IMG/VR virus record: IMGVR_UViG_3300031787_000001
Span: 1-64,000 of that record
Strand: one strand, 5' to 3'
Length of the DNA stretch: 64,000 nucleotides
Shown here: piece after piece, positions 1-17,335 of the stretch
Layout: every line of letters starts with the position of its first letter
How positions within the stretch are numbered: position 1 is the first letter of the stretch
Notes under the pieces: generated by a model
Database searches by the model: none
Told to the model about the DNA's origin: nothing
What the model saw: only the letters and a program-made list of their open reading frames with translations
Program-made: the position numbers and the translations under genes

Positions 1-3000
1 TTTTAGGGTTTATAAATTTAGCATTTGCGGTAATAATTTTAGATCCACTAATAACATTAGGTGTTTGAAATCTAGTACCATAAAAATATGAAGTACTACT
101 ACTATCTTTTATTTCACCCCATAATAATGGTTTTGGTTTAGGATCTGTTTTAATGTTATTGATAACACCCATTGTCATATCATCATCAATTTTATATATC
201 CCTCCACCCATTTTAACTACCGCCGCTCTTAACCATTCATAATTCTTATCAGGAGATGAATAGTTTTTATTTTCAATTAATTGTATATATTTTTCACCAG
301 TTGTTTTATTATCACTAAATCCATTATACGGTACACCAAAAATATTAACACCCGACCTGTGTACTAATGTTTCACCATTAAATGATTTACCAGATAAGTC
401 TACTGTCACTGTCCTTCCATCTTGTACTGTTAATGATATTTCACTTTCAGGTCTCTTTATTAATGATTCTTTAACCTTTATTTGTGCTTTATTTACTATG
501 GACTCAAATAAAGGTCTATAGGTTGCCATAGTGGCCTCTTTTGGATCAGGTAAAGACGCGTATGGTATTCTTGTTCCCGTAAAATTTGTTGTTATATTAT
601 TATTTCTTATAGAATGTGTAACCTCCGTAATCCAATACGTACCTTTAAACATTGGAATATTTTTAAGATAAAAATACATTGTTGGTTGTATCATGACGTT
701 ACCCATAGAACTAACTTGACATGTATATGAAGATTGTCTGTATATGTCATATAACCCAATATCTACTTGATATGCATTTGCACCTGATTCAGATCTACCT
801 AAATTTTCCATTGCAATAAATGATTCGGTAGTATTTTTTAATGATGATTGGTCAAGTTGTACTCCTTTAAAAATGCCTTGATTTTGATCACCAAAACTTA
901 CCTCGAATGCAACGACTCTATTTGATTTTGATAATTCAGCATTATCAAATACAGCAGGTGCGGTTATTATTAATGGATTTCTATTTTGATCTTGTATATT
1001 AAAACTGTCATCAATAAATTTATAATCTTTATTATATTTGTTAAGATCCAAATGTTTTGATGTTGGTCCAGTATATTGTAAAATTACTTTGGGTGACGAT
1101 TCTTGATAATCAACTTCTAAAAACGTACCAAACAAATTTTTGGCTAATTTTTTGGAAGGAATCAATTTAACTTTATTACTATAATTTGCACCATAAAAAT
1201 TTATATATGAGGGAAGTACTCTCATATCAAATCCGGTACCTTGTATTAAAACAGAAATAACACTGTATAAATTTAATTTTTGATTTTTTGTGTCACCTAA
1301 TGGTATTAATTTTTGTATATTAAAATACGCATCAGAACCAATATCTTTGTTTGCCTTATCTAAAAATAAAAATTCTTCAAATAATAATCTTTGACCGATT
1401 GAATTACCTCCAATCCACTTATCATTAAATGACTTGAAAAAATTATATGTTTCTAGTTTTAATATTTCATCACCAAAACCACTAACTGGTGTCATTCTTT
1501 GTGCATCTGTTGTTTTTGTTAACTTACTAAACTGTGAAATTAAATTTTGTAAAAATTCGGTATGTCTTTTTGTTAAAGTTGTTGTTGAATCAATTACTAA
1601 AACATTTTTTCTAATATAATCTATAAAATCAGGTTTAGTTGGTGATGCGGTGTTTAAATAATGTCCAGCAAATATTTGTGCTAACGATCTAAACTGAATT
1701 ACATTGTCCTCACTTAACTCAATATCATTTGTTGCAAAAAATTGTAAATATTTATTATCAATATCTTCACCTAAATAAAGATCAATATATTTTGAATTGG
1801 GCGATACTTGAGCAATATTAAATGTATTATAACTAAATGTACTTCCAGAATTTATATTTGCAAACCCATTAACAACATATGAATCAATTTCTTTAGGGTT
1901 TCCGTTTGTAAATTTTATTAAATTATCTTTACTTAATAATTTTGTATGTATGTTCTGTATCTTGTCTTTTTGTCTATTTTTTATATCAATAATAATTTGA
2001 TCTGTTCTACCAGTATCTGTTGATATTTTTTCTACACTACACAAATCTTTTAAAATAGATTGAAACTTATCATAAAAAACACTTTCAAATTTTTTATAAG
2101 GTAATTCTTCTTTTACTGTCGACGTTGCAAAATTTATGAACATTTCTTCCATTTCGTTCAGAATATCTGGATTAAATGTTGCAATTAAATCGATAACTTT
2201 TCTATAGTTTGTGTCCATAGAAAATATATTATCATTAGTTGTGGAACCACTATTATAATTTCTGGTATATTGGTATGGGGAAGCAAATGTTAATCCACTA
2301 AAATTTTTAAATAAACCCTCATCCTCCCAAATTATTCTTGTGTATTTTTGTTCTTGTTCAAAAAAATTATTTTGTGGTATATATGAATTACCCCCATCTG
2401 ATGGTAATACAGTAAATCTGAGATCTTTCGGGTCGTATTTGGAATTATCAACAAATGTTGTCCAATATCTCATTCCGTTTGTCACAACTCGAGCATTACC
2501 TATAATCCCACCTGCAACAACATTTACATCAAAAGAAGGACTACCTGAAAATACATCATAATGATTATAACCATTAACTACTTGGTGAAATATAGCATCA
2601 TAATATGGATGAATACCTACATCAGAATTATTAGAATATGTCACACCACTACCATTTAATGTAAATGTAAATCCAGAATTATTATCAAAAAACTCACTAC
2701 CATTAAAATTTGTGGTTATATTTGATGTACTTAAAAAACCATCTAATATATCATTATTGTCTAAAATTTTCTTTTTATATCTGTGATATATTGATCCCCA
2801 TTTTAATAGTAAATGATATGGTATAAAATGTGTTGAACCTATTTCTCTAAATAAAGAAGATACTTTTATGTTATTTGAAAATCTATCTTCCAAATCTTTA
2901 AAAGGTAATGAATTAAGTAATAAATATGCAGAACCCACATACTTACCAACTCTTCCTGATTTGAAGAAATCGGAATATAATTGTTTGTGGAAATATGGTG

Positions 3001-5614
3001 TATTTAAAATATTGACTTTAGTATCTAAACCGAATGTTTGTACCGTACCAGGTACTGGTACTGTAGTGGTACCTAAATACAATTTATTTGAAAATATATT
3101 ATTCTTAAAATTATCTTTAACCCATAATTCGGGATTCACCTCTGTTGAAATAAATCCTTCCGATGTATTGACTTTTAAAGTGTTACCAAATTTAAACTCA
3201 TTATCAGTAAAACTATTTTGTTTTAAATAAGACAAATATGTTTTTGAATTAAATGGATATATTTCTGTTCTATATGTATCTGACTGATATCTTAATAAAT
3301 CATCACTTAATTTAACATATAAAGAATCATTATTAACAGGTTTAGGGTTAGTATTATTATTAGAATTCCTGTTAGGGTCGTAATATTGTTCAAAAATGTG
3401 TGGACTATCTATTATGCTAGAAATATAACCTACTGTTGGTAGTCTATCAACGTAATATGGATATCTATCAAATGGTGATAGACTTCTCATTAAGTTTAAT
3501 AAGTCAGGAAAACTTTTAACACTGTCTCTTAATATATCAATAACATCATTGTCATGTTTTATCGACTCGCTTAAGTTTTCAAATTCAAAATTAGATAATT
3601 CTCTTATTGTATTTGAATTAAAAGAATCAAATAATGTTATATAATATGATCTTTCAAATATTTCATATAATATAGAAACTAATGTTTTTTCTGTATAAGG
3701 AATTACACCTAAAGATTTACCAAAACCATTTATTAGTGTGTCAAGTGTACTTATCTTTTTTATTTTACCCTCATCTAAATTATCTTCAAAAACGTAATCT
3801 ATTTTACCAATACCACCTTCCTTTTCTGATAATGGGTCATATTTTTTAGTTGTTACCGCAATATAGTCTTCAACAAAATCAATTTCTGGCCACAATTTCT
3901 TATCATTAGTTTTCAATTTTTGTAATAGATCTTTATCACCAGGATATGCCACTACTTTACTTTTACTACCTGAACCTGTACTTTTTTTAACTTCCGGCCA
4001 AGGATATACCGCACCACCACCAGGTGTTTCATCGGAAAATCCGACTAATAAATTTTTTCTAGTTTCGGCATCTTGAAATGCCTTATTATGTGTATCTTTT
4101 AATAGTCTAATGTAAACTTCTGCATTAGCAAGAACCACAGCAAATATGTTTCTTATTGTTGGTTCAAACCCAATACCCTTTTTAGGGTCTCTTAAAATTG
4201 TATTTATTTCTTTTTCAACATCTTTTTGTAGTGCATCTTTTTGTTTTAAAAATTCATTTACCATTTTTTTATAATCCTCACCAAGTAAATCAATATTCAA
4301 CCCAACTTGTTTGTCTTTATAACCAATATAATCATCGATATTTTTAATATCGTTACTTTTCTTTAATTTAGTAAAATCACTACTTGTCTTGTTTATTACA
4401 TTATTGGCAAATAAATTAGTTTTAGATAAAAGTTCTTTATACCTATTTAAACCCTTTTCAAGAGTATCGTCTGAATCTCCTTTTATTTTTGATTTATCTG
4501 TTTTATCGGATATATTTAATAAATAAAATAATTCATCCCCCCTTGTTCCGCCAGTGAAACTAACAGTAGATAAATTTTTCTTTGTCCATATGTTTATGTA
4601 TTCACCTAATTTTGATAAACCATCTTCATATTCAACTATACCTGCGAAAACCTTAAAATCTACTTTTTGAAATATTTCGTTTTCCAGTATTTTATCTAAA
4701 CTTTCTGAAATTGTAATAAGTTCTTTAAGTGTTTTTACGGGAAAATTTGGATCAATTAATTTTTTTTGTTTTAGTTCATTATAAACAGATCTTAAAATTG
4801 CATATCCTCTAGATGATTTTGAAATCTTTTTTTCAAAAGTACCACTACCTTCATTAAATGTTGGTCTTGTACTATTTTCAACTCTAAACATATAAGGACA
4901 ATTTAACATACCATTTAATGGTATATCAGAAATGTGTGCAAATGTTGCACCAACGAATGTTGCCATACTTTCAAAATTACCAGACCCTTCGTTAAATTTT
5001 GTTGTAAATTTTACTAAATGTAATCTATATCTAATTGCCTTCCCATAATAACCTTTAACTGTCAAATAAAATATCGGCCAAGGTAAATGAAAAAATGCTT
5101 TATATGGTGAGTTTTCGGGAGACTCAAATAATGTTTTACCTCTAACATCTATAAAGTTTATTGTAACTTGTGGAATTGAGTTCAAACCTTTGGTTGTTAT
5201 TGTTATACTATCAATACCAAAACTTTGTCCGGTTCCATCCGATTGAAAAAATTCACCAGTACCTACATTTATTTTATTACCATTTATGTCGGTACTTTTT
5301 TTTGTAATTTCTGTTTTTTCTAAAAATGCATTTGTCCATGACGTATCAAAATCATCACCATTTTGATTTCTTAAAAAATTAAGAGTACCTTTTGCTATAG
5401 ATATTAAAGTATTTTTATCATTACTAGAAACTAAAATAGATCTGGGAATAATATCCGCCTCCAAATTAACATACATCATCAAATTTTCAGGACGAATAGA
5501 TCTAGGTTCTATTTCACCATCCACAACAACACTGTTAGGGTCGACATAAATTAAATTATTTACATCTGATTTAACAAGAATGTCCTCACTATTTGAAATA
5601 TCTTTATTCCCCAT
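1..5614 (-). CDS. Giant baseplate hub-like virion protein (>1870 aa), partial; the 3' end lies beyond the left edge of the window
   Basis: ATG at 5614 (MGNKDISNSEDILVKSDVNNLIYVDPNS...) overlaps the end of the upstream gene. The same frame reads through at about 690 (QVSSMGNVMIQPTMYFYLKNIPMFKGTYWITEVTHSIRNNNITTNFTGTR, resembling a gp27/gpD-type hub C-terminus) and at the window edge. It is absent from the ORF track, consistent with no in-window stop. Confidence 0.8.
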   Translation of the reverse strand, partial: MGNKDISNSEDILVKSDVNNLIYVDPNSVVVDGEIEPRSIRPENLMMYVNLEADIIPRSILVSSNDKNTLISIAKGTLNFLRNQNGDDFDTSWTNAFLEKTEITKKSTDINGNKINVGTGEFFQSDGTGQSFGIDSITITTKGLNSIPQVTINFIDVRGKTLFESPENSPYKAFFHLPWPIFYLTVKGYYGKAIRYRLHLVKFTTKFNEGSGNFESMATFVGATFAHISDIPLNGMLNCPYMFRVENSTRPTFNEGSGTFEKKISKSSRGYAILRSVYNELKQKKLIDPNFPVKTLKELITISESLDKILENEIFQKVDFKVFAGIVEYEDGLSKLGEYINIWTKKNLSTVSFTGGTRGDELFYLLNISDKTDKSKIKGDSDDTLEKGLNRYKELLSKTNLFANNVINKTSSDFTKLKKSNDIKNIDDYIGYKDKQVGLNIDLLGEDYKKMVNEFLKQKDALQKDVEKEINTILRDPKKGIGFEPTIRNIFAVVLANAEVYIRLLKDTHNKAFQDAETRKNLLVGFSDETPGGGAVYPWPEVKKSTGSGSKSKVVAYPGDKDLLQKLKTNDKKLWPEIDFVEDYIAVTTKKYDPLSEKEGGIGKIDYVFEDNLDEGKIKKISTLDTLINGFGKSLGVIPYTEKTLVSILYEIFERSYYITLFDSFNSNTIRELSNFEFENLSESIKHDNDVIDILRDSVKSFPDLLNLMRSLSPFDRYPYYVDRLPTVGYISSIIDSPHIFEQYYDPNRNSNNNTNPKPVNNDSLYVKLSDDLLRYQSDTYRTEIYPFNSKTYLSYLKQNSFTDNEFKFGNTLKVNTSEGFISTEVNPELWVKDNFKNNIFSNKLYLGTTTVPVPGTVQTFGLDTKVNILNTPYFHKQLYSDFFKSGRVGKYVGSAYLLLNSLPFKDLEDRFSNNIKVSSLFREIGSTHFIPYHLLLKWGSIYHRYKKKILDNNDILDGFLSTSNITTNFNGSEFFDNNSGFTFTLNGSGVTYSNNSDVGIHPYYDAIFHQVVNGYNHYDVFSGSPSFDVNVVAGGIIGNARVVTNGMRYWTTFVDNSKYDPKDLRFTVLPSDGGNSYIPQNNFFEQEQKYTRIIWEDEGLFKNFSGLTFASPYQYTRNYNSGSTTNDNIFSMDTNYRKVIDLIATFNPDILNEMEEMFINFATSTVKEELPYKKFESVFYDKFQSILKDLCSVEKISTDTGRTDQIIIDIKNRQKDKIQNIHTKLLSKDNLIKFTNGNPKEIDSYVVNGFANINSGSTFSYNTFNIAQVSPNSKYIDLYLGEDIDNKYLQFFATNDIELSEDNVIQFRSLAQIFAGHYLNTASPTKPDFIDYIRKNVLVIDSTTTLTKRHTEFLQNLISQFSKLTKTTDAQRMTPVSGFGDEILKLETYNFFKSFNDKWIGGNSIGQRLLFEEFLFLDKANKDIGSDAYFNIQKLIPLGDTKNQKLNLYSVISVLIQGTGFDMRVLPSYINFYGANYSNKVKLIPSKKLAKNLFGTFLEVDYQESSPKVILQYTGPTSKHLDLNKYNKDYKFIDDSFNIQDQNRNPLIITAPAVFDNAELSKSNRVVAFEVSFGDQNQGIFKGVQLDQSSLKNTTESFIAMENLGRSESGANAYQVDIGLYDIYRQSSYTCQVSSMGNVMIQPTMYFYLKNIPMFKGTYWITEVTHSIRNNNITTNFTGTRIPYASLPDPKEATMATYRPLFESIVNKAQIKVKESLIKRPESEISLTVQDGRTVTVDLSGKSFNGETLVHRSGVNIFGVPYNGFSDNKTTGEKYIQLIENKNYSSPDKNYEWLRAAVVKMGGGIYKIDDDMTMGVINNIKTDPKPKPLLWGEIKDSSSTSYFYGTRFQTPNVISGSKIITANAKFINPK

Positions 5615-5927
5615 AATATAATTTATACAATTCTACGTTTCTTTTGTAATCTTGTAAAGAGGTAACTAGTGGAAATGGTACTCTAACTACAAAATTATCA
5701 GGTATTTCGAATTCAATACTACCCGCTAATGGGTTGGCCAATAATATTAACCACCCGAAGACAGGAGTACCATAATATTGATCTGAAATTTTATCTAATC
5801 TAGTTTGATTTTTTTTAAAAAAAACATACTTATCTGTCTTTTTTATAGGTATTTCTATGCCAGGTACTATTCTAAACTCACCATCAATAAGAAATTCGTC
5901 ATATCTATCATAATAACTTCTACTCAT
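5604..5927 (-). CDS. LysM-like baseplate wedge / tail protein X-like (T4 gp53 / P2 gpX type)
   Basis: RLDKISDQYYGTPVFGWLILLANP is the typical LysM-like baseplate motif; the gene lies between large baseplate genes. Confidence 0.7.
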   Translation of the reverse strand: MSRSYYDRYDEFLIDGEFRIVPGIEIPIKKTDKYVFFKKNQTRLDKISDQYYGTPVFGWLILLANPLAGSIEFEIPDNFVVRVPFPLVTSLQDYKRNVELYKLYYGE

Positions 5928-8900
5928 TTCTAAAATAATTTAGTTTTTTATCTACAGGTTGTTTTGTAGAATTTATTTTTGTAAGTATATCTTTTTCATT
6001 GGTGTCGGTAATATCTGATTGTGTACCTGTTTTAAACTTAATTTTTAATGTGTCTTTTCTTTTTGGGTATTTTTTTAATTTAAATTTAATATCATCAGGT
6101 TTTTCTAAAAATTTATCTAACGACTTGGATAATTTTTCTTTTTCAACATTAGGTCTGAAAACAAGTACATCAGTATATTGATTTAATATATTATTTTTAT
6201 AATCACTTAATAAATTTGAAATCATTTTTATAACTTGTGCGTCTGTTATTGATTGTGGATTATTAAAATTAACTGTGTTAGAAATTTTATTAGTTAATCT
6301 TACATGGTTATCACTAATATAATCAACGCACGATGAATATTTGTCCAATAAAATATCATATGTAAATCCAGATAAATCAACCTTTGTGAATTTTTCATTT
6401 TCTATTTTTCCATCATGTATATAATAGATTAAATAGTTTAACCCATCTAATGTTTTTATAATTTCATTTCTAGCCAATATTAGATCTTTTTCAATTGCCC
6501 CAAATTTTTCTGGAATTTCATCAAATATTTTTTTAATTTCTGAACTTAAATATGGTTTTAAAATTTGATCTGAATTTGGGACTTTAGCATCCGGTATTTT
6601 TGCGTCTAATAGGTCTTTTGTTAAACTTGGTATTTTATTTTCAATAACATCAACAAATCTTTCTCTAACGTCTCTCAATATTATTGGTAATTCTTTACTT
6701 TTTTTGTATTCACCTACTAAATCTAAAACAACAGTTTGAGCACCATTTGGTTGTGTATAAACATCATATTTTGTTATTGGTCTATATGTTTCAGAAAAGA
6801 ATAAACTTGTAATATCTTCACCATATTTTAATAAAGATGTGTTATAAGCACTCTTATATTTTTCAAAATAATTCTCAACTTGTTTAAATAATCCGTTGAC
6901 TAAATCATCGTAACTTATTTCTTCACCTTCAGGTTTACCTATAAATTTACCATTAACAATATTATTTCCATTATTAACATCGTCTTGTCTTTCAGGTGTT
7001 TTTGGTGCGTTTTTTTGTATCTTTTCTAAAAAATCTTTTGTAAACTGTTCCGCATCAACACCAGCAATTTTTGTATTTGTTGGTATGGATCTCTCATCGT
7101 ACATTTCGGTATTAGCATAAAAATTAGATGATAGTGCGTTCTGTAATTTTTCAACTGGTTTTTCTAATCCATGTCCACCAATGAAACTTAATTGTAATGT
7201 GACAGACGCAATCATCGGTTGTACACCAATACCTTCAGGATTAAAATCCCAAACAGCATCATCAAAATTTATACTTATATCTTTTATGGCAACTTTTGAA
7301 TGATAAAAATCCCCAATTCTTATTATACAAATTGGTGGTGGTCCAAATGTTGTGTTTCTGGCATTTAAATCGGCTTCATCTGATAATCCTTTTATTGGTA
7401 ATGTGTCGCCAGGTCTAATACATTGATGTAAAAATGTTAATCTAGCATTTAAACCTTCCGGTGTCATTGAATGAAATGCGGGATGAAAATATTTTAATTT
7501 TTCTTTTAAAGATGAAAATTGTATTGGTGAATCCTCCTCTAATTTTTTGAAATAAAAACACTCCGATAATGTTTTCATTATCAATCTTTTCATAACATCA
7601 ATAGGTGGTTTCTTTATTTCTTTTTTAATTTCAATTTTACCATCTTCTTCTAATGATGTCTTTGGTAAAACAGGTGGATTTGGTGGTGGTGGAGGTGGTG
7701 TTGGTTGTACCTGTTGTTTAATATATCCTATCTTTACTTTTGATTGTCTACAATTAACCGCAACTGGTGCTACAACATCTAATTTTTCACCTGCAGATAC
7801 ATTTAGCGGATATAAAAAATCTTGTGTTGTACACGAAACACTAGATCCATTTTCTTCTACATTACCATATTCACCATAGTTTGTTACTTTTATTTTAAAT
7901 TTACCATCTATCTCGTATCCAATGTCTCTAAATGTAACAATATCATTAACCCATTGTATTGGGGACTTAGTGTCTTTAATATTATTGGTGGTTGGATCTG
8001 TTGGAAATACATATTTTAATCTTGTTGTTCTAAACTTTTCCATATCAAACGAAGGATCATTTGCTATTTTTTCAAAAATGTCCTTTAAGATTGAATATGT
8101 TCTTCTAAAAGATAAATTAAGGTTATATTCATTATTTGTTAACGCGGATGTTGATGATCCTATTTCAATTGTAACTTCTTGTACCGTACCTCCAGATATG
8201 TCTACTTTTAATTGATCAATTGTTTTTCTATATGTACTATAATTCTCATCTAATTTACTAAAAATATCTGTTAATCTATTTAAAGATATTTGTATTAAAC
8301 TACTTTTACTTGTACCTCTAACATCTGTCTTACCATATAATAATTTTATATCGTTTAACATGTTTTTATCAGGATTTGTTGTTGCACTATATGCGGTTAA
8401 CAAAAGATTTAAATTTTTTTGTAAAGCATTTTTCTGTTTGTCATAATCTCCAGTTTGTTGTGTGGGTGACGATCCTTTATAATAAGAATATGCAGTTTCA
8501 TAACTTTCCGCAGTTATATAATTCTTAGTACTCATTTTTGGATAATCGTTCTCAAATTTTAGATTAACATCTAAATTAATATTTTGTGGTTGAGTACCTC
8601 CACCGCTAGGTGATGTGTTTGGTTCATCTTGTTTAATATCTTCAGTTACTACTTTATATTTTTGTATTAATTCAGTTGATACACCCGCATTCAAATATCT
8701 TTGAATTAGTTTTATATCATCTTCATTTAATGTTGCGTACTTTTTAACTAAATCATATAAGTCAACATCTTGACATCCAGCAAAAAAGGCATTTATATAA
8801 TTGTCCGCCTCTTCATCTGACATATCCTTAAAGACTTCTCTAACCAATAAGTTCATTATACTTGGATGGTCGACAATTACTTTAAATGAAATTGTACCTG

Positions 8901-10773
8901 ATCTTGATGTATTTTGATAAGTATAGATTGGTTCAGGTCTACCTAAAAATAAGTTTTCTTCCCATCTTGCATTGTTTGTTTCATTTACTTTTAAATCATA
9001 TGGTGGAAACCACATAACTCTACCACCGTTTGGTCCTCTTTCGCAATATGGTAAATCTTGAACTGTAAATCCTTCTCTATTAGATGTTTTCCATGCCAAG
9101 TTCTCAATTGAAAACATATATTTTTTAGCATAAAATCCACCACCATACGGGTAATTTGGAAATATATTTGACGATCCTTCAAAACTTTTATTACCATCGG
9201 ACATAGGTGCAATATTCAAATTATAAGGTGTTGTTAAAACACTACCTTCAAATTTTCTAATATTAGTCCCTCTTTTCATGGTATCTGACCTTGTCATGTA
9301 TGGTCTATCTTTTGTCCACACTCTACAATACTCAACACCACTTTCTTCTCCTGTAAATTTATCTGTATATTTAACTGCAGAACCTCTAGATATTCTAATA
9401 TCACCTTCACCAAAAACTCTACTTGTTTGGTCAATAACATTTGCCACATGTGAACGGGCTTCACCACCATTTGTTGGTAATGTATTTAATAGTTCTTGTG
9501 TTACTCCTAAAATAGAATCTTCTCTAAAATCAAAACCACTCGATAGAGACTGATCGTAATTTGATTTTTGTAAATTAAAAAACTCGTTGTTCGCACCTAT
9601 TTTATTTTTTGAATTTTTACTTATCCAAGTTAATTTATTTGAAATCTGTCCTCCCTCACCGATATTTTTTGTTCTTTGAAATAGAGTTGCTTGTATCTCA
9701 TCAAACATTAAAGTTAAATAAAAATTACTTTTAACAGGTCTATCATTAAAATCACTCATCGCGTATTTTACATCATTTCCTCTGTCATCACCGATATATG
9801 CGATACCTGCCGGTGCTTCAACACCTAAAACATTTTTAACACCTTGTGCAACATTATCAACAAAATTAAATAATTTAGATGAATTTTGTGATCTTGCTGT
9901 TGTGGTATAATTTGGTGCATATTTTGAAAAAGATAAGTTGTCAAATAATCTTTGTTTCTGACCCTGACCCATATACTCAATAAAAAGATCAGAAGGTTTC
10001 CTGTCTCTTTGTGGTCTTCTTTGAATACCGATTAAAGAACCTAAAGCACCTGTGACATCCTGAAGTATCGCACCTAATTCAGTTCTTGTATCAGGTCTAA
10101 CATTTACAGGATTCGCCGGATTACTTAAATAATCACCAGGTATTTCTGTAAATGGGAATTCCACACCGGCAACAGATTGTAAAAAATCAATGGCTTTACC
10201 GGGTAATGTTTTTGCAACAGTAATTTGATAGTTTGGATCAACTAACGGTTCTCTACCTGTTATTAGATTTATTGCTGTGGTATTATTACCTCTTATTGCA
10301 TCTAATAATCTAACCCTACCTTCTGTTACTCTTTTAAGATTTTGTTCTATTCTAGAATACACGGGACCCTTTTGATCTTTATCCCTAATATATGATGCCG
10401 CAAATTTAAATAATTCAGATTCATTATCGTAATTTGATGTGGTCATTATACCAACTAAATTATAGTTACCACTTCTAAAATATGGTGTTCCATTATAATA
10501 TAATAATAAATTTGCTCTTCTTGGAATTGTATCTATCCTATCTTTAACAAAATATTGTAACGGTTTAAATGTGTTAGAATTTTGATGTTGTTGTAAATCA
10601 TTTGCTCTATTTGTATCTACCGCACCCGGATCTACATTTGAAAAATCACTTAGATTTTGTACTGTATAGTTACTTGCATTAAATGTCTGTGGACCATTTG
10701 GTTGTTGTAGTGTTCTAACAATTAACGCATCCCTAAATGTTCTTGTTGTATTAAAATCTAAATATGTTGGCAT
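5920..10773 (-). CDS. 1617-aa baseplate / tail-tube-initiator-like protein with two tube-fold-like segments and an OmpA-C-like segment
   Basis: Follows the tape measure gene. Segments FPPYDLKVNETNNARWEENLFLGRPEPIYTYQNTSRSGTISFKVIVD and PPICIIRIGDFYHSKVAIKDISINFDD...PMIASVTLQLSF resemble gp48/gp54/CIS-tube folds; IEIGSSTS...YNLNLSFRRTYSI resembles OmpA-C. Confidence 0.55.
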   Translation of the reverse strand: MPTYLDFNTTRTFRDALIVRTLQQPNGPQTFNASNYTVQNLSDFSNVDPGAVDTNRANDLQQHQNSNTFKPLQYFVKDRIDTIPRRANLLLYYNGTPYFRSGNYNLVGIMTTSNYDNESELFKFAASYIRDKDQKGPVYSRIEQNLKRVTEGRVRLLDAIRGNNTTAINLITGREPLVDPNYQITVAKTLPGKAIDFLQSVAGVEFPFTEIPGDYLSNPANPVNVRPDTRTELGAILQDVTGALGSLIGIQRRPQRDRKPSDLFIEYMGQGQKQRLFDNLSFSKYAPNYTTTARSQNSSKLFNFVDNVAQGVKNVLGVEAPAGIAYIGDDRGNDVKYAMSDFNDRPVKSNFYLTLMFDEIQATLFQRTKNIGEGGQISNKLTWISKNSKNKIGANNEFFNLQKSNYDQSLSSGFDFREDSILGVTQELLNTLPTNGGEARSHVANVIDQTSRVFGEGDIRISRGSAVKYTDKFTGEESGVEYCRVWTKDRPYMTRSDTMKRGTNIRKFEGSVLTTPYNLNIAPMSDGNKSFEGSSNIFPNYPYGGGFYAKKYMFSIENLAWKTSNREGFTVQDLPYCERGPNGGRVMWFPPYDLKVNETNNARWEENLFLGRPEPIYTYQNTSRSGTISFKVIVDHPSIMNLLVREVFKDMSDEEADNYINAFFAGCQDVDLYDLVKKYATLNEDDIKLIQRYLNAGVSTELIQKYKVVTEDIKQDEPNTSPSGGGTQPQNINLDVNLKFENDYPKMSTKNYITAESYETAYSYYKGSSPTQQTGDYDKQKNALQKNLNLLLTAYSATTNPDKNMLNDIKLLYGKTDVRGTSKSSLIQISLNRLTDIFSKLDENYSTYRKTIDQLKVDISGGTVQEVTIEIGSSTSALTNNEYNLNLSFRRTYSILKDIFEKIANDPSFDMEKFRTTRLKYVFPTDPTTNNIKDTKSPIQWVNDIVTFRDIGYEIDGKFKIKVTNYGEYGNVEENGSSVSCTTQDFLYPLNVSAGEKLDVVAPVAVNCRQSKVKIGYIKQQVQPTPPPPPPNPPVLPKTSLEEDGKIEIKKEIKKPPIDVMKRLIMKTLSECFYFKKLEEDSPIQFSSLKEKLKYFHPAFHSMTPEGLNARLTFLHQCIRPGDTLPIKGLSDEADLNARNTTFGPPPICIIRIGDFYHSKVAIKDISINFDDAVWDFNPEGIGVQPMIASVTLQLSFIGGHGLEKPVEKLQNALSSNFYANTEMYDERSIPTNTKIAGVDAEQFTKDFLEKIQKNAPKTPERQDDVNNGNNIVNGKFIGKPEGEEISYDDLVNGLFKQVENYFEKYKSAYNTSLLKYGEDITSLFFSETYRPITKYDVYTQPNGAQTVVLDLVGEYKKSKELPIILRDVRERFVDVIENKIPSLTKDLLDAKIPDAKVPNSDQILKPYLSSEIKKIFDEIPEKFGAIEKDLILARNEIIKTLDGLNYLIYYIHDGKIENEKFTKVDLSGFTYDILLDKYSSCVDYISDNHVRLTNKISNTVNFNNPQSITDAQVIKMISNLLSDYKNNILNQYTDVLVFRPNVEKEKLSKSLDKFLEKPDDIKFKLKKYPKRKDTLKIKFKTGTQSDITDTNEKDILTKINSTKQPVDKKLNYFRNE

Positions 10774-10810: not shown

Positions 10811-12727
10811 TTATTCATCTACCACTAGATAACTATTTTTTGTTGGTGATACAACTGTAGGTTCAATTTTTATTCTTTTTATTATATTACCAAATTTATC
10901 GTAATCAAATACTATATTATTATTTGTTTGTGGTGCATTATTTGATGTTGTTGCGGTTGTTTTTGTGTTTGATGCTTCTTTGTTTTCTTTGTTCATATTT
11001 TGAGCCTTAAGTCCATCCCTAATTATCTTTTGACCTTCTTTTAACTGATTATCTACACTATTACCCATTTTATCAACAAAGTCTGTAACCAATTTACCTC
11101 CTGCAACCGATTCGGTTTTAGTTGATTGTGCTAATTTAGCTTGTGCTGTTGGTCCAAATCCTAATGTTTCCGCAAGTTGAGTTCCTTTTTTACCCGCCTG
11201 ATTCATACCCAATAACGCAATGTAATTGACATCTCTTTTTATGTTTTCAATATTTGAAGCCTGTCCCCTCGCAATGTCTTCTGTTGTTTTTTCTTTTAAT
11301 TGGTCTTGGTATTGTAATAATTCTTTTGCTTGTTGGTCTGTTAACTCATCTAATGCAACTTCTTGTTTACCAAAATATTTTTGTAAATCTGGTGATTTTC
11401 CTAAATCGATGGTCATCTTACCATCTTTCATTCTCGCTATGTTTGTTAAAAATTCCGTTTGGTCAGGATCTAAAGTTAAACCTCTAGCCAATAAATCAGA
11501 AGCCGCCGATGATTTTTCAGCCGCTGCCAAAGCACCTTGTGCGAGTTCTTTGTATGAAATACCCATTTGAGCGGCCATTTCTTTTGCTCTACGTAAATTA
11601 ACACCAGTTATTTCAAATCTACCTTGTTCAGAATTATATGTTGCCAAACCTTTTGCAGCACCAATTAATGCGTCCTGTAGTCCCTCAACATTGTTTGTTG
11701 ACATGTACATTAATTTAAGTGGATCATTAAAATCACCTATTGCACCACCTAATACTTGTAAATTAGCGGATAATTCTAACGCACCTTCAGGATTCATAAC
11801 TTTATCCGCTATTTGGAAAACTTCATTCATACTCATTCTAAATTCAGTTGCCTTTCTTGCCATAGTTGCCAATCCATCAATACCGTTTTTAAAACCATAC
11901 GAATTTATTTTGTCCATATTTTGTGCTAAGTCACCAATTACTTTTTTAGATTGTAAACCGAGTTCCATAGAACGTTTACCCGCTCTTTCTATTGCTGAAT
12001 TTGCTTCTTGTGCACCTATACCTATTTTTTCAAAATCATCATATAAGCTAACCATGTCTTGCATTGAACCTAAATATGCCTTACCAACCTCTCCCGCCTT
12101 TTCTAATGTTTGTTGATTGACCAATGCAAATCTACCACTTTCATTTACAATTGAAATTGCAGCATCTGCCACCTCCGCAAAACTAATACCAAGTTGAACT
12201 AATCTTGGGTTGGCGTCTGTTATTGTTTCTCTAAAATCTCTAGAAAGATCACCTGTTAAAAGTGCTTTGGAGTTAACTTCTTCTAATAATTTTGTCTGTC
12301 GTGCATAATAACTTTCCATTCCCTTGGCCACCATTTCGACAAGTGTTTTACCCATACCTTGTAAAGTAAAAGTTCCTGTCTTAATTTTTTCCATTAGATC
12401 ATCTATACCCACCAATTGATCTTGTAAATTAGGTAAATAAGTATTTGATTGTGATTCTTGAGTTTTTAATAAACCCATAACAGCGTTCAAAGATGCTGTA
12501 CCAACATCCTTAATTGCACTACCGGTACTAACAGTACCTGTACCACTTGTGCTAGATGAACTTGATCCAGAGTTAGATTGTTTTTGTACCTTATTCCATT
12601 CATCCATTAATCTTCTTTTTTCATCGGAAGTTAATGGATTACCACCATTTTGTCTTAAAGCTTCATTAAATACGTCAGTATAATCATTTGAAAATCTTGC
12701 TAACGCTGAATAATTTAAATTTGGCAT
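10811..12727 (-). CDS. Tape measure protein
   Basis: 638 aa, Ala/Gly/Leu-rich and helical in composition; canonical position after tube and chaperone and before the baseplate genes. Confidence 0.75.
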   Translation of the reverse strand: MPNLNYSALARFSNDYTDVFNEALRQNGGNPLTSDEKRRLMDEWNKVQKQSNSGSSSSSTSGTGTVSTGSAIKDVGTASLNAVMGLLKTQESQSNTYLPNLQDQLVGIDDLMEKIKTGTFTLQGMGKTLVEMVAKGMESYYARQTKLLEEVNSKALLTGDLSRDFRETITDANPRLVQLGISFAEVADAAISIVNESGRFALVNQQTLEKAGEVGKAYLGSMQDMVSLYDDFEKIGIGAQEANSAIERAGKRSMELGLQSKKVIGDLAQNMDKINSYGFKNGIDGLATMARKATEFRMSMNEVFQIADKVMNPEGALELSANLQVLGGAIGDFNDPLKLMYMSTNNVEGLQDALIGAAKGLATYNSEQGRFEITGVNLRRAKEMAAQMGISYKELAQGALAAAEKSSAASDLLARGLTLDPDQTEFLTNIARMKDGKMTIDLGKSPDLQKYFGKQEVALDELTDQQAKELLQYQDQLKEKTTEDIARGQASNIENIKRDVNYIALLGMNQAGKKGTQLAETLGFGPTAQAKLAQSTKTESVAGGKLVTDFVDKMGNSVDNQLKEGQKIIRDGLKAQNMNKENKEASNTKTTATTSNNAPQTNNNIVFDYDKFGNIIKRIKIEPTVVSPTKNSYLVVDE

Positions 12728-12731: not shown

Positions 12732-12881
12732 TTAACCTTTTTCTAATTCTATTATATAATTTATGAAATATCTTCTTATATAAATAGGCATGGACAAAAT
12801 ATCCGAATAGGTAAAACCTTTTTTAACCAAAAATAATATCTCTGAAAGTTGATCCTTTCTATATTCCGTAGAAAGGGCGAA
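12732..12881 (-). CDS. Start-less C-terminal extension of the tail assembly chaperone (G-T-like product reached by +1/-2 frameshift)
   Basis: The frame shifted +1 from 12859..13608 reads (F)ALSTEYRKDQLSEILFLVKKGFTYSDILSMPIYIRRYFINYIIELEKG* to TAA at 12732-12734. It has no start codon before residue 30 and an upstream in-frame TAG; it overlaps TTT TTT CGC at 12877-12885. Confidence 0.7.
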   Translation of the reverse strand, partial: FALSTEYRKDQLSEILFLVKKGFTYSDILSMPIYIRRYFINYIIELEKG

Positions 12882-13608
12882 AAAAGTCCACCCCGAAACC
12901 TATAACAAATAGGACTTCTTCTCCTGATGGGGCGATTGTTTTTTGTGTTAAATCTAAACCTGGTTTGTTATCGTTTATAAATTTTCTAAAGTCCTGAGCA
13001 TCTTTAATTGGTAATCTATCAATAAAATTTTTAATATTCATCATATCTTTATTACCTGCAACAGATTTAATCATAAATTCAAGCCTTTTTGTCATAATCG
13101 GTGGTACACCTAAACCATTCCAACTTTTTTGAATTTCGTCTATTTCACTTTCTTGTTTTTTTGTTAAAAATTTAAAAGTAACATCTACCTTAGATTTTTC
13201 CATAAAATATTTGTATTCACCATTTGAATCTGGTGTTAAAGTGAAATCTTTCATTTTTAATGTACCTAAGTCAACGGTTACATTAAAATCTTTATTTGTT
13301 TTCGGATCAGTTAATGTTACTTTATATTCTGAACCAAAAGCAGTGTTTCTAAGAAAAATTAAAATCGCTTGAATATCTTCATCAATTAATTCGTCAATAG
13401 TTATGTCTCTGTCTAAAACTTTTCTTTTTAATAATTCATTAACAACACCATTCGTATTAACAATATTAGGTGCGGCTAATATATTTTCATCTGTTGCTGT
13501 TAGATATGCGACTCTTACTGATTTTTTATTGTTTGGGTAGTGTATTCCTCTTGATGGTAATTCTACCACATCGTATGCGATTGTTGGGTCTATTCTTAAT
13601 TCTTCCAT
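12859..13608 (-). CDS. Tail assembly chaperone / T4 gp26-like baseplate hub assembly protein
   Basis: VELPSRG...MT(A)xDE(N)IL-type N-terminus and a C-terminal GVDFFRP motif; lies between the tube and tape measure genes. Confidence 0.7.
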   Translation of the reverse strand: MEELRIDPTIAYDVVELPSRGIHYPNNKKSVRVAYLTATDENILAAPNIVNTNGVVNELLKRKVLDRDITIDELIDEDIQAILIFLRNTAFGSEYKVTLTDPKTNKDFNVTVDLGTLKMKDFTLTPDSNGEYKYFMEKSKVDVTFKFLTKKQESEIDEIQKSWNGLGVPPIMTKRLEFMIKSVAGNKDMMNIKNFIDRLPIKDAQDFRKFINDNKPGLDLTQKTIAPSGEEVLFVIGFGVDFFRPFYGI

Positions 13609-13710: not shown

Positions 13711-14199
13711 TTAATAAACAAGAATACAACGATCTGGTCTTAATCCACAATCAATTGATGCAATTTCATCTTGTTTGTAATCAAGTGAACCAAAATTTAA
13801 ACTTGTTATAAATGTACCTTGAAGAATCCATTTTTCAACAACAACACCTGTTGGGTCCAACATTTCTAATTCAATATCTTTTTTATAACCAGCAGCATAA
13901 CCCATACGACCTGTAACTGATTCTGCATGTAAACGGAACCACTCCATTAACGCCTGTGCGGCAGAAGGACCAATTGGGTCTTTAAATGTTACTTTCATCT
14001 CATCCCATGTAAATCTACCAGCAACATATGTTGAGGTATTTAAAAAAGGAATCTCAGTTGCATTTATTTTTGCTGATGGTCTCTGTGTTGATATTACATA
14101 CCATTCGTTAATTCCCAAAGACGAAGGGAAACGAAGGATAAACCTGTTCTGTCTTTTCGGTTCGTAAGGAACCGGCATTTTCATTAGTAAATCTGCCAT
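13711..14199 (-). CDS. gp19: Tail tube protein (T4 gp19-like)
   Basis: EPKRQNRF...QRPS...YVAGRFTWDEMKVTFKDP...EWF...GYKKDIELEMLDPTGVVVEKWILQG; directly downstream of the sheath gene. Confidence 0.9.
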   Translation of the reverse strand: MADLLMKMPVPYEPKRQNRFILRFPSSLGINEWYVISTQRPSAKINATEIPFLNTSTYVAGRFTWDEMKVTFKDPIGPSAAQALMEWFRLHAESVTGRMGYAAGYKKDIELEMLDPTGVVVEKWILQGTFITSLNFGSLDYKQDEIASIDCGLRPDRCILVY

Positions 14200-14503: not shown

Positions 14504-17335
14504 TTATATATTATCAAATGAAGCACCTGTTGGTGTTATAATGAACTCTAAATCAATAAATTCAAGAGAACGAGTAGGTTTAATATAGATTTTACCTCTC
14601 AATGTGTTAGCGTCAATATCTTCAGGGGCATTTGATACCGTAACACGGAAATCATAAAGACCTCTTTCTTTCTTGATTGCTTCCATTATTGGATTAACCA
14701 ATCTTAAGAATTCATTTCTTACCTGATCATCATTTTGTTCAAACAATAATCTAACGGCTACCGCAGATATTAATTTTCTTGCTCTTAATAATAATCTTCT
14801 TACGTTAATTCTATCAAGTGCAGATTCTCTAACTTGTAAGGTTTTATTACCCCAAATTATTGTACCTGTATCTGAGAAAGTCGCAATTGGGTTTATTCTA
14901 CCTTTGTAAAGAATGTCTCTTTCGTCCAATGTTAATTTCTTAACAGCTTTAATTGATTTAACTAAACCTCTTGAATAACCCGCAACCGCGAACCATGGAT
15001 AAGAAACATTATCAGTTAATGCTACATTTCTTAATACCTCACCTGTTGGTGGTATGTAAAGTTGTGTTGCATTATCACCATCTCTTACCTGTATCCAAGG
15101 CCAGTATGTAGCTGAATAGTTACTATCATAACCTAAATCATCTAACATACCAACAACTTCTTCGGCATCATCTACATTTGGTGAATTTATAATATATAAT
15201 GAATCGGCTCTTTCTTCTTCAACCATATCAATTGCTTGATTAGTTAATGAATTGTGATCATAAAAGTTTAGACCAGGCGTTGCGAATACATTTATATTTA
15301 CCGCCTCAGGATTTGAGAATGTTTCAATACCTTTTAGAAAAGCATAATAATCTGAGTTACCTTCAGTAGAACTGAAAACACCACCATTACTTTCCCAGTT
15401 TGACACATATGTATTTTTTCCAAATATGTATTGATCGGTGTTTGTTTTTACATTTCTGTAAATGTCCCAACCATCAAATCCACCATAAGCCGCGAATGTG
15501 AACTTACGGAAAGTTATATTTTCTAACTTATCTTTATTTAAACCTTCTAAATCATATGGGGTTGTTTTATATGTTATACCCGTAATTGACGCGGCGTTAA
15601 CAGATAAGTGGAATGCATATGTTGTTGTATCTTCTGAACTTAAACCTTTATATTTTAAAAGATCGTTATCATACTTGAACCCTTCTTGAGTTGAAAAACC
15701 TAAAGATACTTTTCTTGGTTTATCTCCATTTGTTGTGATTGGAGATCCGTCGGATTCATAACCAACGATATCACCCGCATCGAAGTATTCTGTTTTATAC
15801 ATTAAACTACCCAATATTGAATTTGTTCCGAAACTTGTGTTACTTGAAAAACCTTTGAAACCTGCGGGAATTGCATCTGCCGGTGCGTTTTCTTTCATCT
15901 CCAACATAATGAATTTTGATTTTAATTCATATTCACCATCACTCGTACCTAATTTTTTAGCAATATATCCCGGAACTTCAGGGTCCATAGAACATCTTGA
16001 ATATTTTTCAAGAGCCACTACATTTTCATCGGTATCATTAAAATCACGAACAAGTAAATCAAATTCTTTTGTATCTAAATTAATGTTAGCAATTGTAATT
16101 TTTACTTGTTGATTAGACGCTTCACCATCAGATATTGTGATAACATCAAAAAGATCTGCAACTTTACCACCACGAACTTCAGATACTACTGTTGGTGACA
16201 ATGCAGTACTCCATCTTTCCGCGAAATCGAGTTGGTCTAAATTATAAACATTACTAGTACTTAAACCTCTAATTAAACCTTGTTTATATAAATTTTTAAC
16301 TAAATTAGGATAAGACTCGTGAAGATATAAAGGGAATTCAACATAAGATTTATCAAATACAGAATTACCAATTACTTTACCAATATATTTTGAAGATGTT
16401 AAATCCATACTACATTGATATGATTTAAGACCACCGGTTAATCCATTAACACTTAATTTGAATTCACTTAAAGGATCAGAATCTAATGTAGAAGATGTGA
16501 TATTAACATTTGAAGAATTTGTCACTTCTAATGTTAAAGATTGACCAACATATCTACCTCTAGATCTTAATGCCGCAACAATAACATTCGAATAATCCGT
16601 ATTTAAAGAAGCAGGATACTTGAATCTAGTTACGGTAAATGTATTTCCTGTATCGGGATAAACAAATAAATAAGAATAAACACCATCAATTGTTGTATCT
16701 ACACCTGGAGTTGATTCAGTATAATAAACATTATACCAATTTTTACCATTGTTTGTACCTATTGGTGATGATATTGTTGTACCAGTTAAACCAGATACTG
16801 ATGAATTAGGAACAGGTCCAACTGTAAACCAGTTACCACCATTAAATGTTGTTCCACTTATATACTCAGGTATTGTAGTACCATCTGTTGTTAACTTATC
16901 TGATAGTTCAGTATAAAACGCACTTAATGTAACTGCTGTTGTTGACATTCCACCATTTGTGGTTGTAGGAGTTGCGGTTGTATCTACAGTAACACCACCT
17001 AATGTTCTAATACCAAAAGTGTTAAAAGGTCTGTAACCTGTTAAACCTAAAACTCTTGTTACAAATAATTGATTAGATTCTTCTAAATATGATTTTGCAA
17101 CATATCCTAATTCATATTTTGGATTACCATTACCATCTTTTTCAGGTGATGTTGTTCCGAAATATGTTCTAAACTCATCAAAACTTGTAATTAATACTGG
17201 TTCGAAAGCAGGTCCTTTTAATGTCTCCCCAACCAAACCCAATGTAGTTACACCAACACTTTGTGCAACAAATGTTAAATCTAATTCAGATGTGTACACA
17301 CCTGGTGACACGAATACTCTGTTTGAAGTTGCCAT
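14504..17335 (-). CDS. gp18: Contractile tail sheath protein (T4 gp18-like, 943 aa)
   Basis: FVSPGVYTSELD N-terminus; PWFAVAGYSRG, LYKGRINPI, IWGNKTLQ...SALDRINVRRLLL, IYIKPTRSLEFI C-terminal motifs. Confidence 0.93.
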   Translation of the reverse strand: MATSNRVFVSPGVYTSELDLTFVAQSVGVTTLGLVGETLKGPAFEPVLITSFDEFRTYFGTTSPEKDGNGNPKYELGYVAKSYLEESNQLFVTRVLGLTGYRPFNTFGIRTLGGVTVDTTATPTTTNGGMSTTAVTLSAFYTELSDKLTTDGTTIPEYISGTTFNGGNWFTVGPVPNSSVSGLTGTTISSPIGTNNGKNWYNVYYTESTPGVDTTIDGVYSYLFVYPDTGNTFTVTRFKYPASLNTDYSNVIVAALRSRGRYVGQSLTLEVTNSSNVNITSSTLDSDPLSEFKLSVNGLTGGLKSYQCSMDLTSSKYIGKVIGNSVFDKSYVEFPLYLHESYPNLVKNLYKQGLIRGLSTSNVYNLDQLDFAERWSTALSPTVVSEVRGGKVADLFDVITISDGEASNQQVKITIANINLDTKEFDLLVRDFNDTDENVVALEKYSRCSMDPEVPGYIAKKLGTSDGEYELKSKFIMLEMKENAPADAIPAGFKGFSSNTSFGTNSILGSLMYKTEYFDAGDIVGYESDGSPITTNGDKPRKVSLGFSTQEGFKYDNDLLKYKGLSSEDTTTYAFHLSVNAASITGITYKTTPYDLEGLNKDKLENITFRKFTFAAYGGFDGWDIYRNVKTNTDQYIFGKNTYVSNWESNGGVFSSTEGNSDYYAFLKGIETFSNPEAVNINVFATPGLNFYDHNSLTNQAIDMVEEERADSLYIINSPNVDDAEEVVGMLDDLGYDSNYSATYWPWIQVRDGDNATQLYIPPTGEVLRNVALTDNVSYPWFAVAGYSRGLVKSIKAVKKLTLDERDILYKGRINPIATFSDTGTIIWGNKTLQVRESALDRINVRRLLLRARKLISAVAVRLLFEQNDDQVRNEFLRLVNPIMEAIKKERGLYDFRVTVSNAPEDIDANTLRGKIYIKPTRSLEFIDLEFIITPTGASFDNI

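What the first reader, a model, noticed from the sequence alone, without database searches (positions are those of the whole stretch)
12732..12899. Hidden +1 (or -2) programmed frameshift in a T4-like tail assembly chaperone
Seen: the chaperone ends GAC TTT TTT CGC CCT TTC TAC GGA ATA TAG. Slipping +1 on TTT-C (Phe to Phe) opens ALSTEYRKDQLSEILFLVKKGFTYSDILSMPIYIRRYFINYIIELEKG*, which fills the gap to the tape measure gene almost exactly. This frame has no early start codon and is closed upstream by TAG. Established: lambda G/G-T-type chaperone pairs sit between tube and tape measure genes and are usually made by -1 shifting. Inference: a TTTTTTC +1/-2 recoding signal in a T4-superfamily-like myophage, where frameshifting is not the textbook mechanism.
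Basis: partly seen in the sequence, partly recalled or inferred. Interest (0 to 1): 0.75.

Follow-up and report, generated by a model that had tools for sequence, protein, structure and literature searches.

The report
+1 frameshift in phage tail chaperone
A jumbo freshwater phage most likely makes the long form of its tail assembly chaperone (a relative of T4 gp26/gp51) by a ribosome slip of one base forward on UUU-UUU-C before a very rare arginine codon, a layout kept in all the roughly 80 related phage loci examined, although no shifted protein has been observed.

Summary
On the minus strand, a 249-aa ORF lies between the tail tube and tape measure genes. It ends FFRPFYGI-stop. The +1 frame is open from 12899 to 12735, has no start codon before its conserved part, and ends 4 nt before the tape measure ATG.

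The ORF belongs to the T4 gp26/gp51 family (PF12322, phrog_150). Its best structural matches are two phage tail assembly chaperones.

- **Conservation:** all of the roughly 80 related loci (30-74% identity) and seven cultured phages carry the same +1 extension.
- **Selection:** the extension evolves as protein: 36% of codon differences are synonymous in that frame, against 7-9% in the other two.
- **Natural fusions:** seven database proteins carry the same two parts fused in frame, and T4 gp51 carries the extension in frame.
- **Shift site:** stop codons in relatives confine it to the Phe-Phe codons. These are invariably TTT TTT, followed by CGN only. CGC is 0.6% of this genome's Arg codons.

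UUU_CGN is the known +1 motif of influenza PA-X and amalgaviruses. Two relatives use a -1 shift at the same junction.

No shifted protein or RNA has been observed. A 2022 paper that I could not read identified the T4-like chaperone genes. I rate this a new variant of a known kind.

The parts
14504..17335 (-). Tail sheath gene (943 aa)
   Evidence: Pfam Phage_sheath_1C and phrog_23, E 4e-61.
13711..14199 (-). Tail tube gene (162 aa, gp19-like)
   Evidence: phrog_4542, E 6e-27. A weak PF06841 match (E 1e-4, 22.6 bits) lies below Pfam's cut-off of 28.2. It is 80-88% identical in the closest clade.
12859..13608 (-). Short chaperone ORF (TAC-N, 249 aa, frame 0), stop TAG at 12861-12859
   Evidence: PF12322 at 31.8 bits against a cut-off of 24.5. 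phrog_150, E 2e-12, covering positions 17-233 of 282, as T4 gp26 does. AF2 model has pLDDT 88.6. Top structural matches are the HK97 TAC 2ob9 (Z 5.2) and YqbN 3klu (Z 5.0).
12891..12894 (-). GGGG run: the Gly codon GGG plus the G of the next codon, 5 nt upstream of the T-run. Candidate Shine-Dalgarno-like stimulator, unproven.
   Evidence: The Gly codon is GGG in 35 of 35 clade members. GGG is 5-7% of Gly codons in this genome, and the Gly two codons upstream varies freely.
12879..12885 (-). Slippery heptamer TTT TTT C (Phe242, Phe243 and the first base of the next codon)
   Evidence: Stop codons in relatives confine the shift to these codons. Both Phe codons are TTT in 35 of 35 clade members, against TTT 24 / TTC 11 at a control Phe four codons upstream.
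12877..12879 (-). Rare Arg codon CGC in the frame-0 A site
   Evidence: CGC is 12 of 2035 Arg codons in the genome (0.6%). This position is CGN in 34 of 35 clade members and never AGR, although AGA is 78% of Arg codons. In-frame TTT TTT occurs 63 times in the genome and is followed by CGN only here.
12859..12899 (-). Overlap zone in which both frames are open (+1 frame opens at 12899, frame 0 closes at 12859)
12732..12884 (-). +1-frame extension (TAC-C part): 48 new residues after Phe-Phe, stop TAA at 12734-12732. Predicted fusion product is 291 aa (residues 1-243 plus 48).
   Evidence: Conserved as protein in 77 unique loci. 35.7% of codon differences are synonymous in this frame, against 9.3% and 7.4% in the others. 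A profile of it finds 1758 cluster representatives, including in-frame fusions. It is the only such locus in the genome.
10811..12727 (-). Tape measure gene (638 aa), named by position
   Evidence: ORF list. The syntenic genes are annotated as tape measure in phages immuto, HSE3, SP-15 and LIS04.

Best explanation
The 249-aa ORF is the short form (TAC-N) of a tail assembly chaperone of the T4 gp26/gp51 family. Most ribosomes terminate at TAG and make this short form. A minority shift one base forward at TTT TTT C. With peptidyl-tRNA-Phe on the second UUU and the very rare CGC waiting in the A site, the tRNA re-pairs with UUC, and decoding continues with GCC in the +1 frame. This adds 48 residues forming a small helical domain and gives a 291-aa long form (TAC-NC) with the junction ..GVDFF/ALSTEYR... 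By analogy with lambda G/GT, the shared N-terminal part would coat the tape measure protein, and the extension would recruit another tail component. Shown here: the two-frame layout, its conservation, purifying selection on the +1 frame, natural in-frame fusions, the confinement of the shift site, and the nucleotide-level constraints at it. Inferred: that the shift is ribosomal, that codon 243 rather than 242 sits in the P site, the efficiency, and what the extension binds.
For: Layout and family. All ~80 IMG/VR relatives have the +1 ORF. So do seven cultured phages and one uncultured record: immuto, Mel-JY01, HSE3, SP-15, LIS04, GXN1 and LR756508. Of 77 unique loci, 21, including the window, have no ATG, GTG or TTG ahead of the conserved domain, and 60 have no ATG. 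The +1 frame shows a coding signature. Seven natural in-frame fusions of PF12322 plus the extension were found, some without any T-run at the junction. T4 gp51 and the fusions extend through phrog_150 positions 236-280, which gp26 and the window ORF lack. The genome holds one PF12322 gene and one extension locus. The shift window is bounded by a +1-frame stop directly before the T-run in about 12 loci and by frame-0 stops two to three codons after it. Codon constraints are TTT TTT 35/35, GGG 35/35 and CGN only. CGC is rare. HSE3, GXN1, L054 and L056 have TTC TTT, so only the second Phe codon can slip there. UUU_CGN is an established +1 motif (PMC3498833, PMC5052127). Independent assemblies agree at the site.
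Against: No trans-frame protein, peptide or reporter result exists. The metatranscriptome contigs do not cover the site, so an RNA-level change is not excluded for this phage. In the overlap, synonymous variation follows frame 0, and the first +1 residues vary (A/V/D/G, L/P). Conservation alone therefore cannot place the shift to the codon. Some relatives (TTT CTA TTC, TTT CTT AAC) fit a slip on the first Phe codon better, so the exact P-site codon may differ between lineages. No stimulatory RNA structure was found. The complex prediction of extension with tube protein gave no answer. The structural match to known chaperones is only Z about 5, and Foldseek found nothing significant.
Confidence: 0.8

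Rival explanations
1. Transcriptional slippage. RNA polymerase drops one U in the T6 run, so a minority of mRNAs encode the fusion in frame and the ribosome does nothing unusual.
For: Many relatives have T6-T7 runs at the junction. The title of Vladimirov et al. [quoted passage not shown] RNA data do not cover the site.
Against: The homopolymer is not conserved. TTT CTT, TTC TTT C, CTT TTT and TTT CTA variants keep the same +1 extension. Six T is short for efficient bacterial slippage (my own knowledge). The CGN-only rule and the rarity of CGC have no role in this model.
Confidence: 0.07
2. A -2 ribosomal frameshift on the T-run reaches the same frame.
For: It gives the same reading frame. On T6-T7 runs, tRNA-Phe could re-pair two bases back.
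Against: In TTC TTT CGT (HSE3, GXN1) and in TTT CTT lineages, a -2 move puts the P-site tRNA on non-cognate triplets, while +1 re-pairing works. A -2 shift would add one residue. The one natural fusion that keeps a full TTT TTT junction (P0107) and P0135 both show exactly two Phe before Gly.
Confidence: 0.04
3. The extension is a separate small protein made from its own start. Candidates are the TTG at 12830 or non-canonical initiation or reinitiation after the TAG.
For: Gene callers list such small ORFs in GenBank records: immuto gp038, HSE3 gp075, SP15_046 and Mel-JY01 WWT39326. Most database hits to the extension are ORF calls of 56-130 aa.
Against: 21 of 77 loci have no start codon before the conserved helix, and the starts that exist sit at inconsistent positions, as by-products of frame-0 codons. 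The TTG at 12830 would remove the conserved first helix. In-frame fusions and T4 gp51 show that the domain works attached to the N-terminal part.
Confidence: 0.05
4. The layout is a sequencing error or a decaying gene, and the true gene is a single frame.
For: One database fragment (P0110) reads the +1 frame in frame from about ten codons upstream.
Against: Independent assemblies are identical at the site. The frame-0 tail FFRPFYG[ILV]-stop is itself conserved with synonymous changes in 35 clade members. The two-frame layout is kept in about 80 loci and seven cultured phages.
Confidence: 0.01

Closest known systems
Lambda gpG/gpGT and the conserved tail assembly chaperone frameshift of long-tailed phages (Levin 1993; Xu 2004; reviewed in PMC5009743)
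   Same: The gene lies between the tube and tape measure genes. A short major product and a C-terminally extended minor product share the N-terminal part. The second ORF has no start codon. [quoted passage not shown]
   Different: The direction is +1, not -1. The site is UUU_UUU_C plus a rare codon rather than an X_XXY_YYZ heptamer. The protein family is gp26/gp51 (PF12322), which resembles solved chaperones only at Z about 5.
T4 gp26 and gp51, hub assembly chaperones, reported as the T4-like TAC genes by Vladimirov, Gautam and Davidson 2022 (paper not held; described in PMC10885494 and PMC12846349)
   Same: Same family: phrog_150 holds gp26, gp51 and the window ORF. gp26 ends at the same Phe-Phe motif as the window's short form. 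gp51 carries the counterpart of the extension.
   Different: T4 has two separate genes, placed away from the tube gene, and no downstream +1 ORF. Its junction reads TTC TTT GAG. gp26 and gp51 are sisters in the tree, which suggests a duplication in that lineage, with a long-branch caveat. The window genome has one gene and needs recoding.
UUU_CGN +1 frameshift motif of influenza A PA-X (UCC_UUU_CGU, PMC3498833) and plant amalgaviruses (PMC5052127)
   Same: An in-frame UUU is followed by a rare CGN Arg codon, and P-site tRNA-Phe can re-pair UUU to UUC. HSE3 and GXN1 even read TTC TTT CGT CCC.
   Different: Those are eukaryotic RNA viruses translated by 80S ribosomes. Here it is a bacteriophage. 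Other lineages of the same family use UGG, UAY or CAC after the run.
Other +1 sites: prfB (CUU_UGA with an upstream Shine-Dalgarno-like element), yeast Ty1 (CUU_AGG_C), Listeria phage PSA (CCC_UGA), and the archaeal myovirus HSTV-2 chaperone ('very likely +1', PMC5009743)
   Same: A P-site tRNA re-pairs one base forward while the A site is slow. An invariant GGGG a few bases upstream recalls the prfB stimulator. Some relatives have CUU_U or CUU_A as in prfB and Ty1.
   Different: No stop codon sits in the A site. The spacing of GGGG to the shift codon (5-8 nt) differs from the 3 nt of prfB. The role of GGGG is untested.
-1 frameshift versions in the same protein family: Pseudomonas jumbo phage PA5oct and Ralstonia phage RsoM2USA
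   Same: Same family, same Phe-Phe junction, and a homologous helical extension.
   Different: Their extension lies in the -1 frame behind U_UUU_UUC or a T9 run. They form one well-supported clade.

Membership tests
Frameshifted tail assembly chaperone pair (G/GT type, TAC-N/TAC-NC) | The gene lies between the tail tube and tape measure genes. | tested here: met
   Gene order is sheath, tube, this ORF, extension, tape measure. The same order holds in immuto, Mel-JY01, HSE3, SP-15 and LIS04.
Frameshifted tail assembly chaperone pair (G/GT type, TAC-N/TAC-NC) | [quoted passage not shown] | tested here: met
Frameshifted tail assembly chaperone pair (G/GT type, TAC-N/TAC-NC) | A conserved slippery sequence lies in the overlap. 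| tested here: met
   A T-rich Phe-Phe site is invariant at synonymous positions.
Frameshifted tail assembly chaperone pair (G/GT type, TAC-N/TAC-NC) | The shift is -1 on an X_XXY_YYZ heptamer (the usual form). | tested here: not met
   The extension is in the +1 frame in the window and in all ~80 fetched relatives. Only PA5oct and RsoM2USA use -1.
Frameshifted tail assembly chaperone pair (G/GT type, TAC-N/TAC-NC) | The fold resembles solved chaperones. | tested here: inconclusive
   After VIA-align re-ranking, 2ob9 (HK97 TAC, Z 5.2, 95 of 104 residues) and 3klu (YqbN, Z 5.0) are first and second, and the next match has Z 2.6. Foldseek E-values are not significant.
Frameshifted tail assembly chaperone pair (G/GT type, TAC-N/TAC-NC) | Both products are made at a fixed ratio and are required for tail assembly. 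| not testable with these tools
   This needs proteomics and genetics in a cultured relative.
T4 gp26/gp51 family (PF12322 T4_baseplate, phrog_150) | The sequence passes the curated family threshold. | tested here: met
   PF12322 scores 31.8 bits against a cut-off of 24.5. phrog_150 gives E 2.3e-12. hhalign to T4 gp26 runs end to end with E 1.3e-4.
T4 gp26/gp51 family (PF12322 T4_baseplate, phrog_150) | The extension corresponds to the C-terminal part specific to gp51. | tested here: inconclusive
   Natural fusions reach phrog_150 positions 273-279 as gp51 does (280), while gp26 stops at 235. The MAFFT alignment shows shared DEIF and M-P/I..R motifs. The direct profile match to gp51 residues 224-244 has E 0.28.
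UUU_CGN +1 ribosomal frameshift motif | An in-frame UUU is followed by a rare CGN codon, with a conserved +1 ORF. | tested here: met
   The site reads TTT TTT CGC. It is CGN in 34 of 35 clade members. CGN is 11% and CGC 0.6% of Arg codons.
UUU_CGN +1 ribosomal frameshift motif | A +1 product is demonstrated. | not testable with these tools
   No peptide or reporter data exist. RNA contigs do not cover the site.
prfB-type +1 frameshift | A stop codon sits in the A site, with a Shine-Dalgarno-like element 3 nt upstream. | tested here: not met
   The A-site codon is a sense codon (CGC). The invariant GGGG lies 5-8 nt upstream.
Transcriptional slippage site | A long homopolymer run is conserved wherever the two-frame layout is conserved. 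| tested here: not met
   Interrupted runs (TTT CTT, TTC TTT C, TTT CTA) keep the layout.

The most novel reading that the evidence does not exclude
The gp26/gp51 chaperone family may be, across most of its diversity, a recoded gene. Its conserved Phe-Phe junction would serve as a slip site that lineages have used in the +1 direction (most of those sampled), in the -1 direction (PA5oct, RsoM2USA), or removed by in-frame fusion. T4's two-gene gp26/gp51 arrangement would be a later duplication. The window's clade would then be the first bacterial-virus use of the UUU_CGN +1 motif, known from influenza PA-X and amalgaviruses. This implies that the motif works on 70S as well as 80S ribosomes.
Probability: 0.45. 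Interest if true: 0.7.

Novelty: new variant of a known kind. Interest (0 to 1): 0.62.

Why it matters
T4 has been quoted as the exception to the otherwise conserved chaperone frameshift of long-tailed phages. These data show that relatives of the T4 chaperone genes do use recoding, mostly in the unusual +1 direction. They also tie T4 gp51 to the long form.

The result would correct the annotation of a very large set of phage genomes. The extension profile hits 1758 cluster representatives. None of the ten GenBank records opened joins the two ORFs: eight are annotated and lack a join, two carry no annotation.

The data offer a family in which +1, -1, fused and duplicated solutions to the same two-product problem can be compared. 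They also suggest that UUU_CGN is a +1 signal in bacteria as well as in eukaryotes.

Tried and rejected
- **Complex prediction:** extension with tube protein scored 0.00, which the tool calls no answer. I do not use it either way.
- **Foldseek against PDB:** nothing significant for the 249-aa model. Only the VIA-align re-ranking gave the two chaperone matches.
- **Sequence search of PDB:** no hit with the family profile.
- **Pfam and PHROGs on the extension alone:** no family.
- **Consensus RNA folding around and downstream of the site:** 21 clade members gave only a 7-pair hairpin, GGGG pairing with CCC across the T-run. It has -3.2 kcal/mol and no covariation, so it is not supported.
- **Laying public runs:** DNA contigs confirm the sequence. 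RNA contigs stop at 12904 and do not cover the site, so they say nothing on RNA-level slippage.
- **Empirical null for open +1 frames past stop codons:** uninformative, because neighbouring genes often start there (17% have 42 or more open codons).
- **Vladimirov et al. 2022:** not held. I used only its title and two citing papers' summaries. Whether it already reports +1 members is unknown.
- **Tree:** the backbone is unresolved, so no ancestral state is claimed. Loci were seeded from +1 members, so their predominance is partly a sampling effect.
- **Stop-codon reassignment:** rejected, because clade members end frame 0 with TAA or TAG, and the extension is in another frame.

Full report
**What is there.** The window is the first 64 kb of a 286,785-bp virus record (GC 30%, about 86% complete) found in lake and freshwater metagenomes. 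On the minus strand lie, in order:
- a tail sheath gene (17335-14504);
- a gp19-like tube gene (14199-13711);
- a 249-aa ORF (13608-12859);
- a 638-aa ORF in the tape measure position (12727-10811).

The 249-aa ORF ends ..GFGVDFFRPFYGI and TAG. The frame one base forward is closed by TAG just before 12899. It then stays open for 55 codons to TAA at 12734-12732, 4 nt before the tape measure ATG. It has no ATG, GTG or TTG before its conserved part. Contigs from two other studies match the region with no difference or indel.

**What the ORF is.** It passes Pfam PF12322 (the T4 gp26 family) at 31.8 bits against a cut-off of 24.5. It also matches phrog_150.
- phrog_150 holds both T4 gp26 (profile positions 14-235) and T4 gp51 (13-280). 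The window ORF covers 17-233, like gp26.
- An AlphaFold model (pLDDT 88.6) has no significant Foldseek match in the PDB.
- On VIA-align re-ranking, the two best chains are both tail assembly chaperones: HK97 2ob9 (Z 5.2, 95 of 104 residues aligned) and YqbN 3klu (Z 5.0). The next match has Z 2.6.
- T4 gp26 and gp51 are listed as hub assembly chaperones absent from the virion. A 2022 paper I could not read reports them as the T4-like tail assembly chaperone genes.

**Conservation of the two-frame layout.** A profile search of IMG/VR confirmed 542 relatives, and the best 80 were fetched (74% down to 30% identity).
- In every one, the +1 frame carries an ORF of 51-119 codons across the frame-0 stop. 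The -1 frame is usually short (mostly 5-45 codons, at most 72) and is not conserved.
- The +1 products align as one small domain, with nearly invariant Met-Pro and Arg positions.
- Cultured phages from three bacterial phyla share the layout: Flavobacterium phage immuto, Microcystis phage Mel-JY01, Bacillus phages HSE3 and SP-15, Listeria phage LIS04 and Streptococcus phage GXN1. None of their records joins the ORFs.
- In the window's clade (35 unique sequences), beyond the overlap, +1-frame codon positions have entropies of 0.93, 0.62 and 1.36. In that frame 35.7% of codon differences are synonymous, against 9.3% and 7.4% in the other two frames. The extension is therefore a protein under selection.

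**It works as a fusion.**
- A profile of the extension, run against 1.84 billion cluster representatives, finds 1758 hits. Most are short ORF calls. Seven proteins of 293-331 aa carry PF12322 followed in frame by the extension.
- In several of these the junction has no T-run, so they are real fusions, not run-length errors. Two keep ..FFG.. exactly as a +1 shift would produce.
- One fusion folds with pLDDT 93.5 and pTM 0.87. The extension forms three helices packed on the body. Its viral structural neighbours are gp26/gp51-type hub proteins.
- T4 gp51 aligns with the fusions through its C-terminus, while gp26 stops at the Phe-Phe motif. The direct profile match of the extension to gp51 is weak (E 0.28).
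- The window's genome has a single PF12322 gene and a single extension locus. A long form can therefore arise only by recoding.

**Where and how the shift happens.**
- In about a dozen loci, a +1-frame stop lies directly before the codon preceding the T-run. In others, the frame-0 stop follows two or three codons after it. A homologous site must lie in the Phe-Phe codons.
- In the clade, both Phe codons are TTT in 35 of 35 sequences, whereas a Phe four codons upstream is TTT 24 / TTC 11.
- The next codon is CGT, CGC, CGA or CGG in 34 of 35 sequences and never AGR.
- A Gly three codons upstream is GGG in 35 of 35 sequences.
- Genome-wide, AGA is 78% of Arg codons and CGC 0.6% (12 of 2035). GGG is 7% of Gly codons. 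In-frame TTT TTT occurs 63 times but is followed by CGN only here.
- HSE3 and GXN1 read TTC TTT CGT CCC, and L054 and L056 read TTC TTT TGG. There, only the second Phe codon can re-pair forward.

The most likely event is this. Peptidyl-tRNA-Phe sits on the second UUU while a slow CGC waits in the A site. The tRNA re-pairs to UUC, and GCC is read next. UUU_CGN is the +1 motif shown for influenza PA-X and proposed for amalgaviruses.

A -2 shift and transcriptional slippage fit the interrupted runs poorly. No RNA structure is supported. The invariant GGGG may act like the prfB stimulator, but this is untested.

**Variation in the family.** Ralstonia phage RsoM2USA and Pseudomonas phage PA5oct have the homologous extension in the -1 frame, behind a T9 run or U_UUU_UUC at the same junction. 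In a tree of the N-terminal parts:
- these two phages form one clade;
- T4 gp26 and gp51 are sisters, on long branches;
- the fusions fall in two or three places;
- the backbone is unresolved.

**Limits.** No product has been seen. RNA contigs do not cover the site. The binding partner of the extension is unknown. Priority over the 2022 paper could not be checked.

Noticed in passing
G000 81744-88990 (outside the window): A cluster of 23 tRNA genes, including Phe(GAA), Arg(ACG), Arg(TCT), Trp(CCA) and Leu(TAG). The phage supplies the very tRNAs involved at the shift site, which could tune shift efficiency during infection.
   Followed up: partly
L092 2700-2980 (Ralstonia phage RsoM2USA); L093 3277-3510 (Pseudomonas phage PA5oct): In these jumbo phages the homologous extension is in the -1 frame, behind GTT TTT TTT TCC or AGT TTT TTC. 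The same Phe-Phe junction is therefore used for a classical -1 shift. Neither record annotates a join.
   Followed up: partly
L002 4854-4964, L087 4743-4913, L090 2821-2940, L001 4728-4964: Small 'hypothetical protein' CDSs in the GenBank records of immuto, HSE3, SP-15 and Mel-JY01 are fragments of the +1 extension, called from incidental start codons. They are probably mis-annotated.
   Followed up: yes
window 12859-13608 compared with L003 3986-4750 and T4 gp26/gp51 (L084): T4 gp26, gp51 and many relatives have two Cys pairs (CxxC...CxxC) resembling a zinc ribbon, and the NrdR zinc ribbon appears as a weak structural match. The window's clade has lost all four cysteines.
   Followed up: no
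L046-L051, about 2300-3900: One divergent clade has a short-form gene of 436-531 aa with a long charged N-terminal addition. Its frame-0 stop lies about ten codons (L051) to 13 codons (L046-L050) after the TTT CTT motif.
   Followed up: no
window 13749-14199, especially 13858-13876: In metagenome contigs, the tube gene shows very high summed depth and several alternative bases within 20 nt. Many related strains appear to share this conserved gene in the same samples.
   Followed up: no
window 5920-10773 (minus strand): A 1617-aa ORF directly follows the tape measure gene and contains a poly-proline stretch. It is presumably a hub or baseplate protein, but it was not analysed.
   Followed up: no
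P0110 (database fragment, 158 aa): A clade member reads from frame 0 into the +1 frame about ten codons upstream of the T-run. This is either an indel variant or a sequencing error.
   Followed up: no
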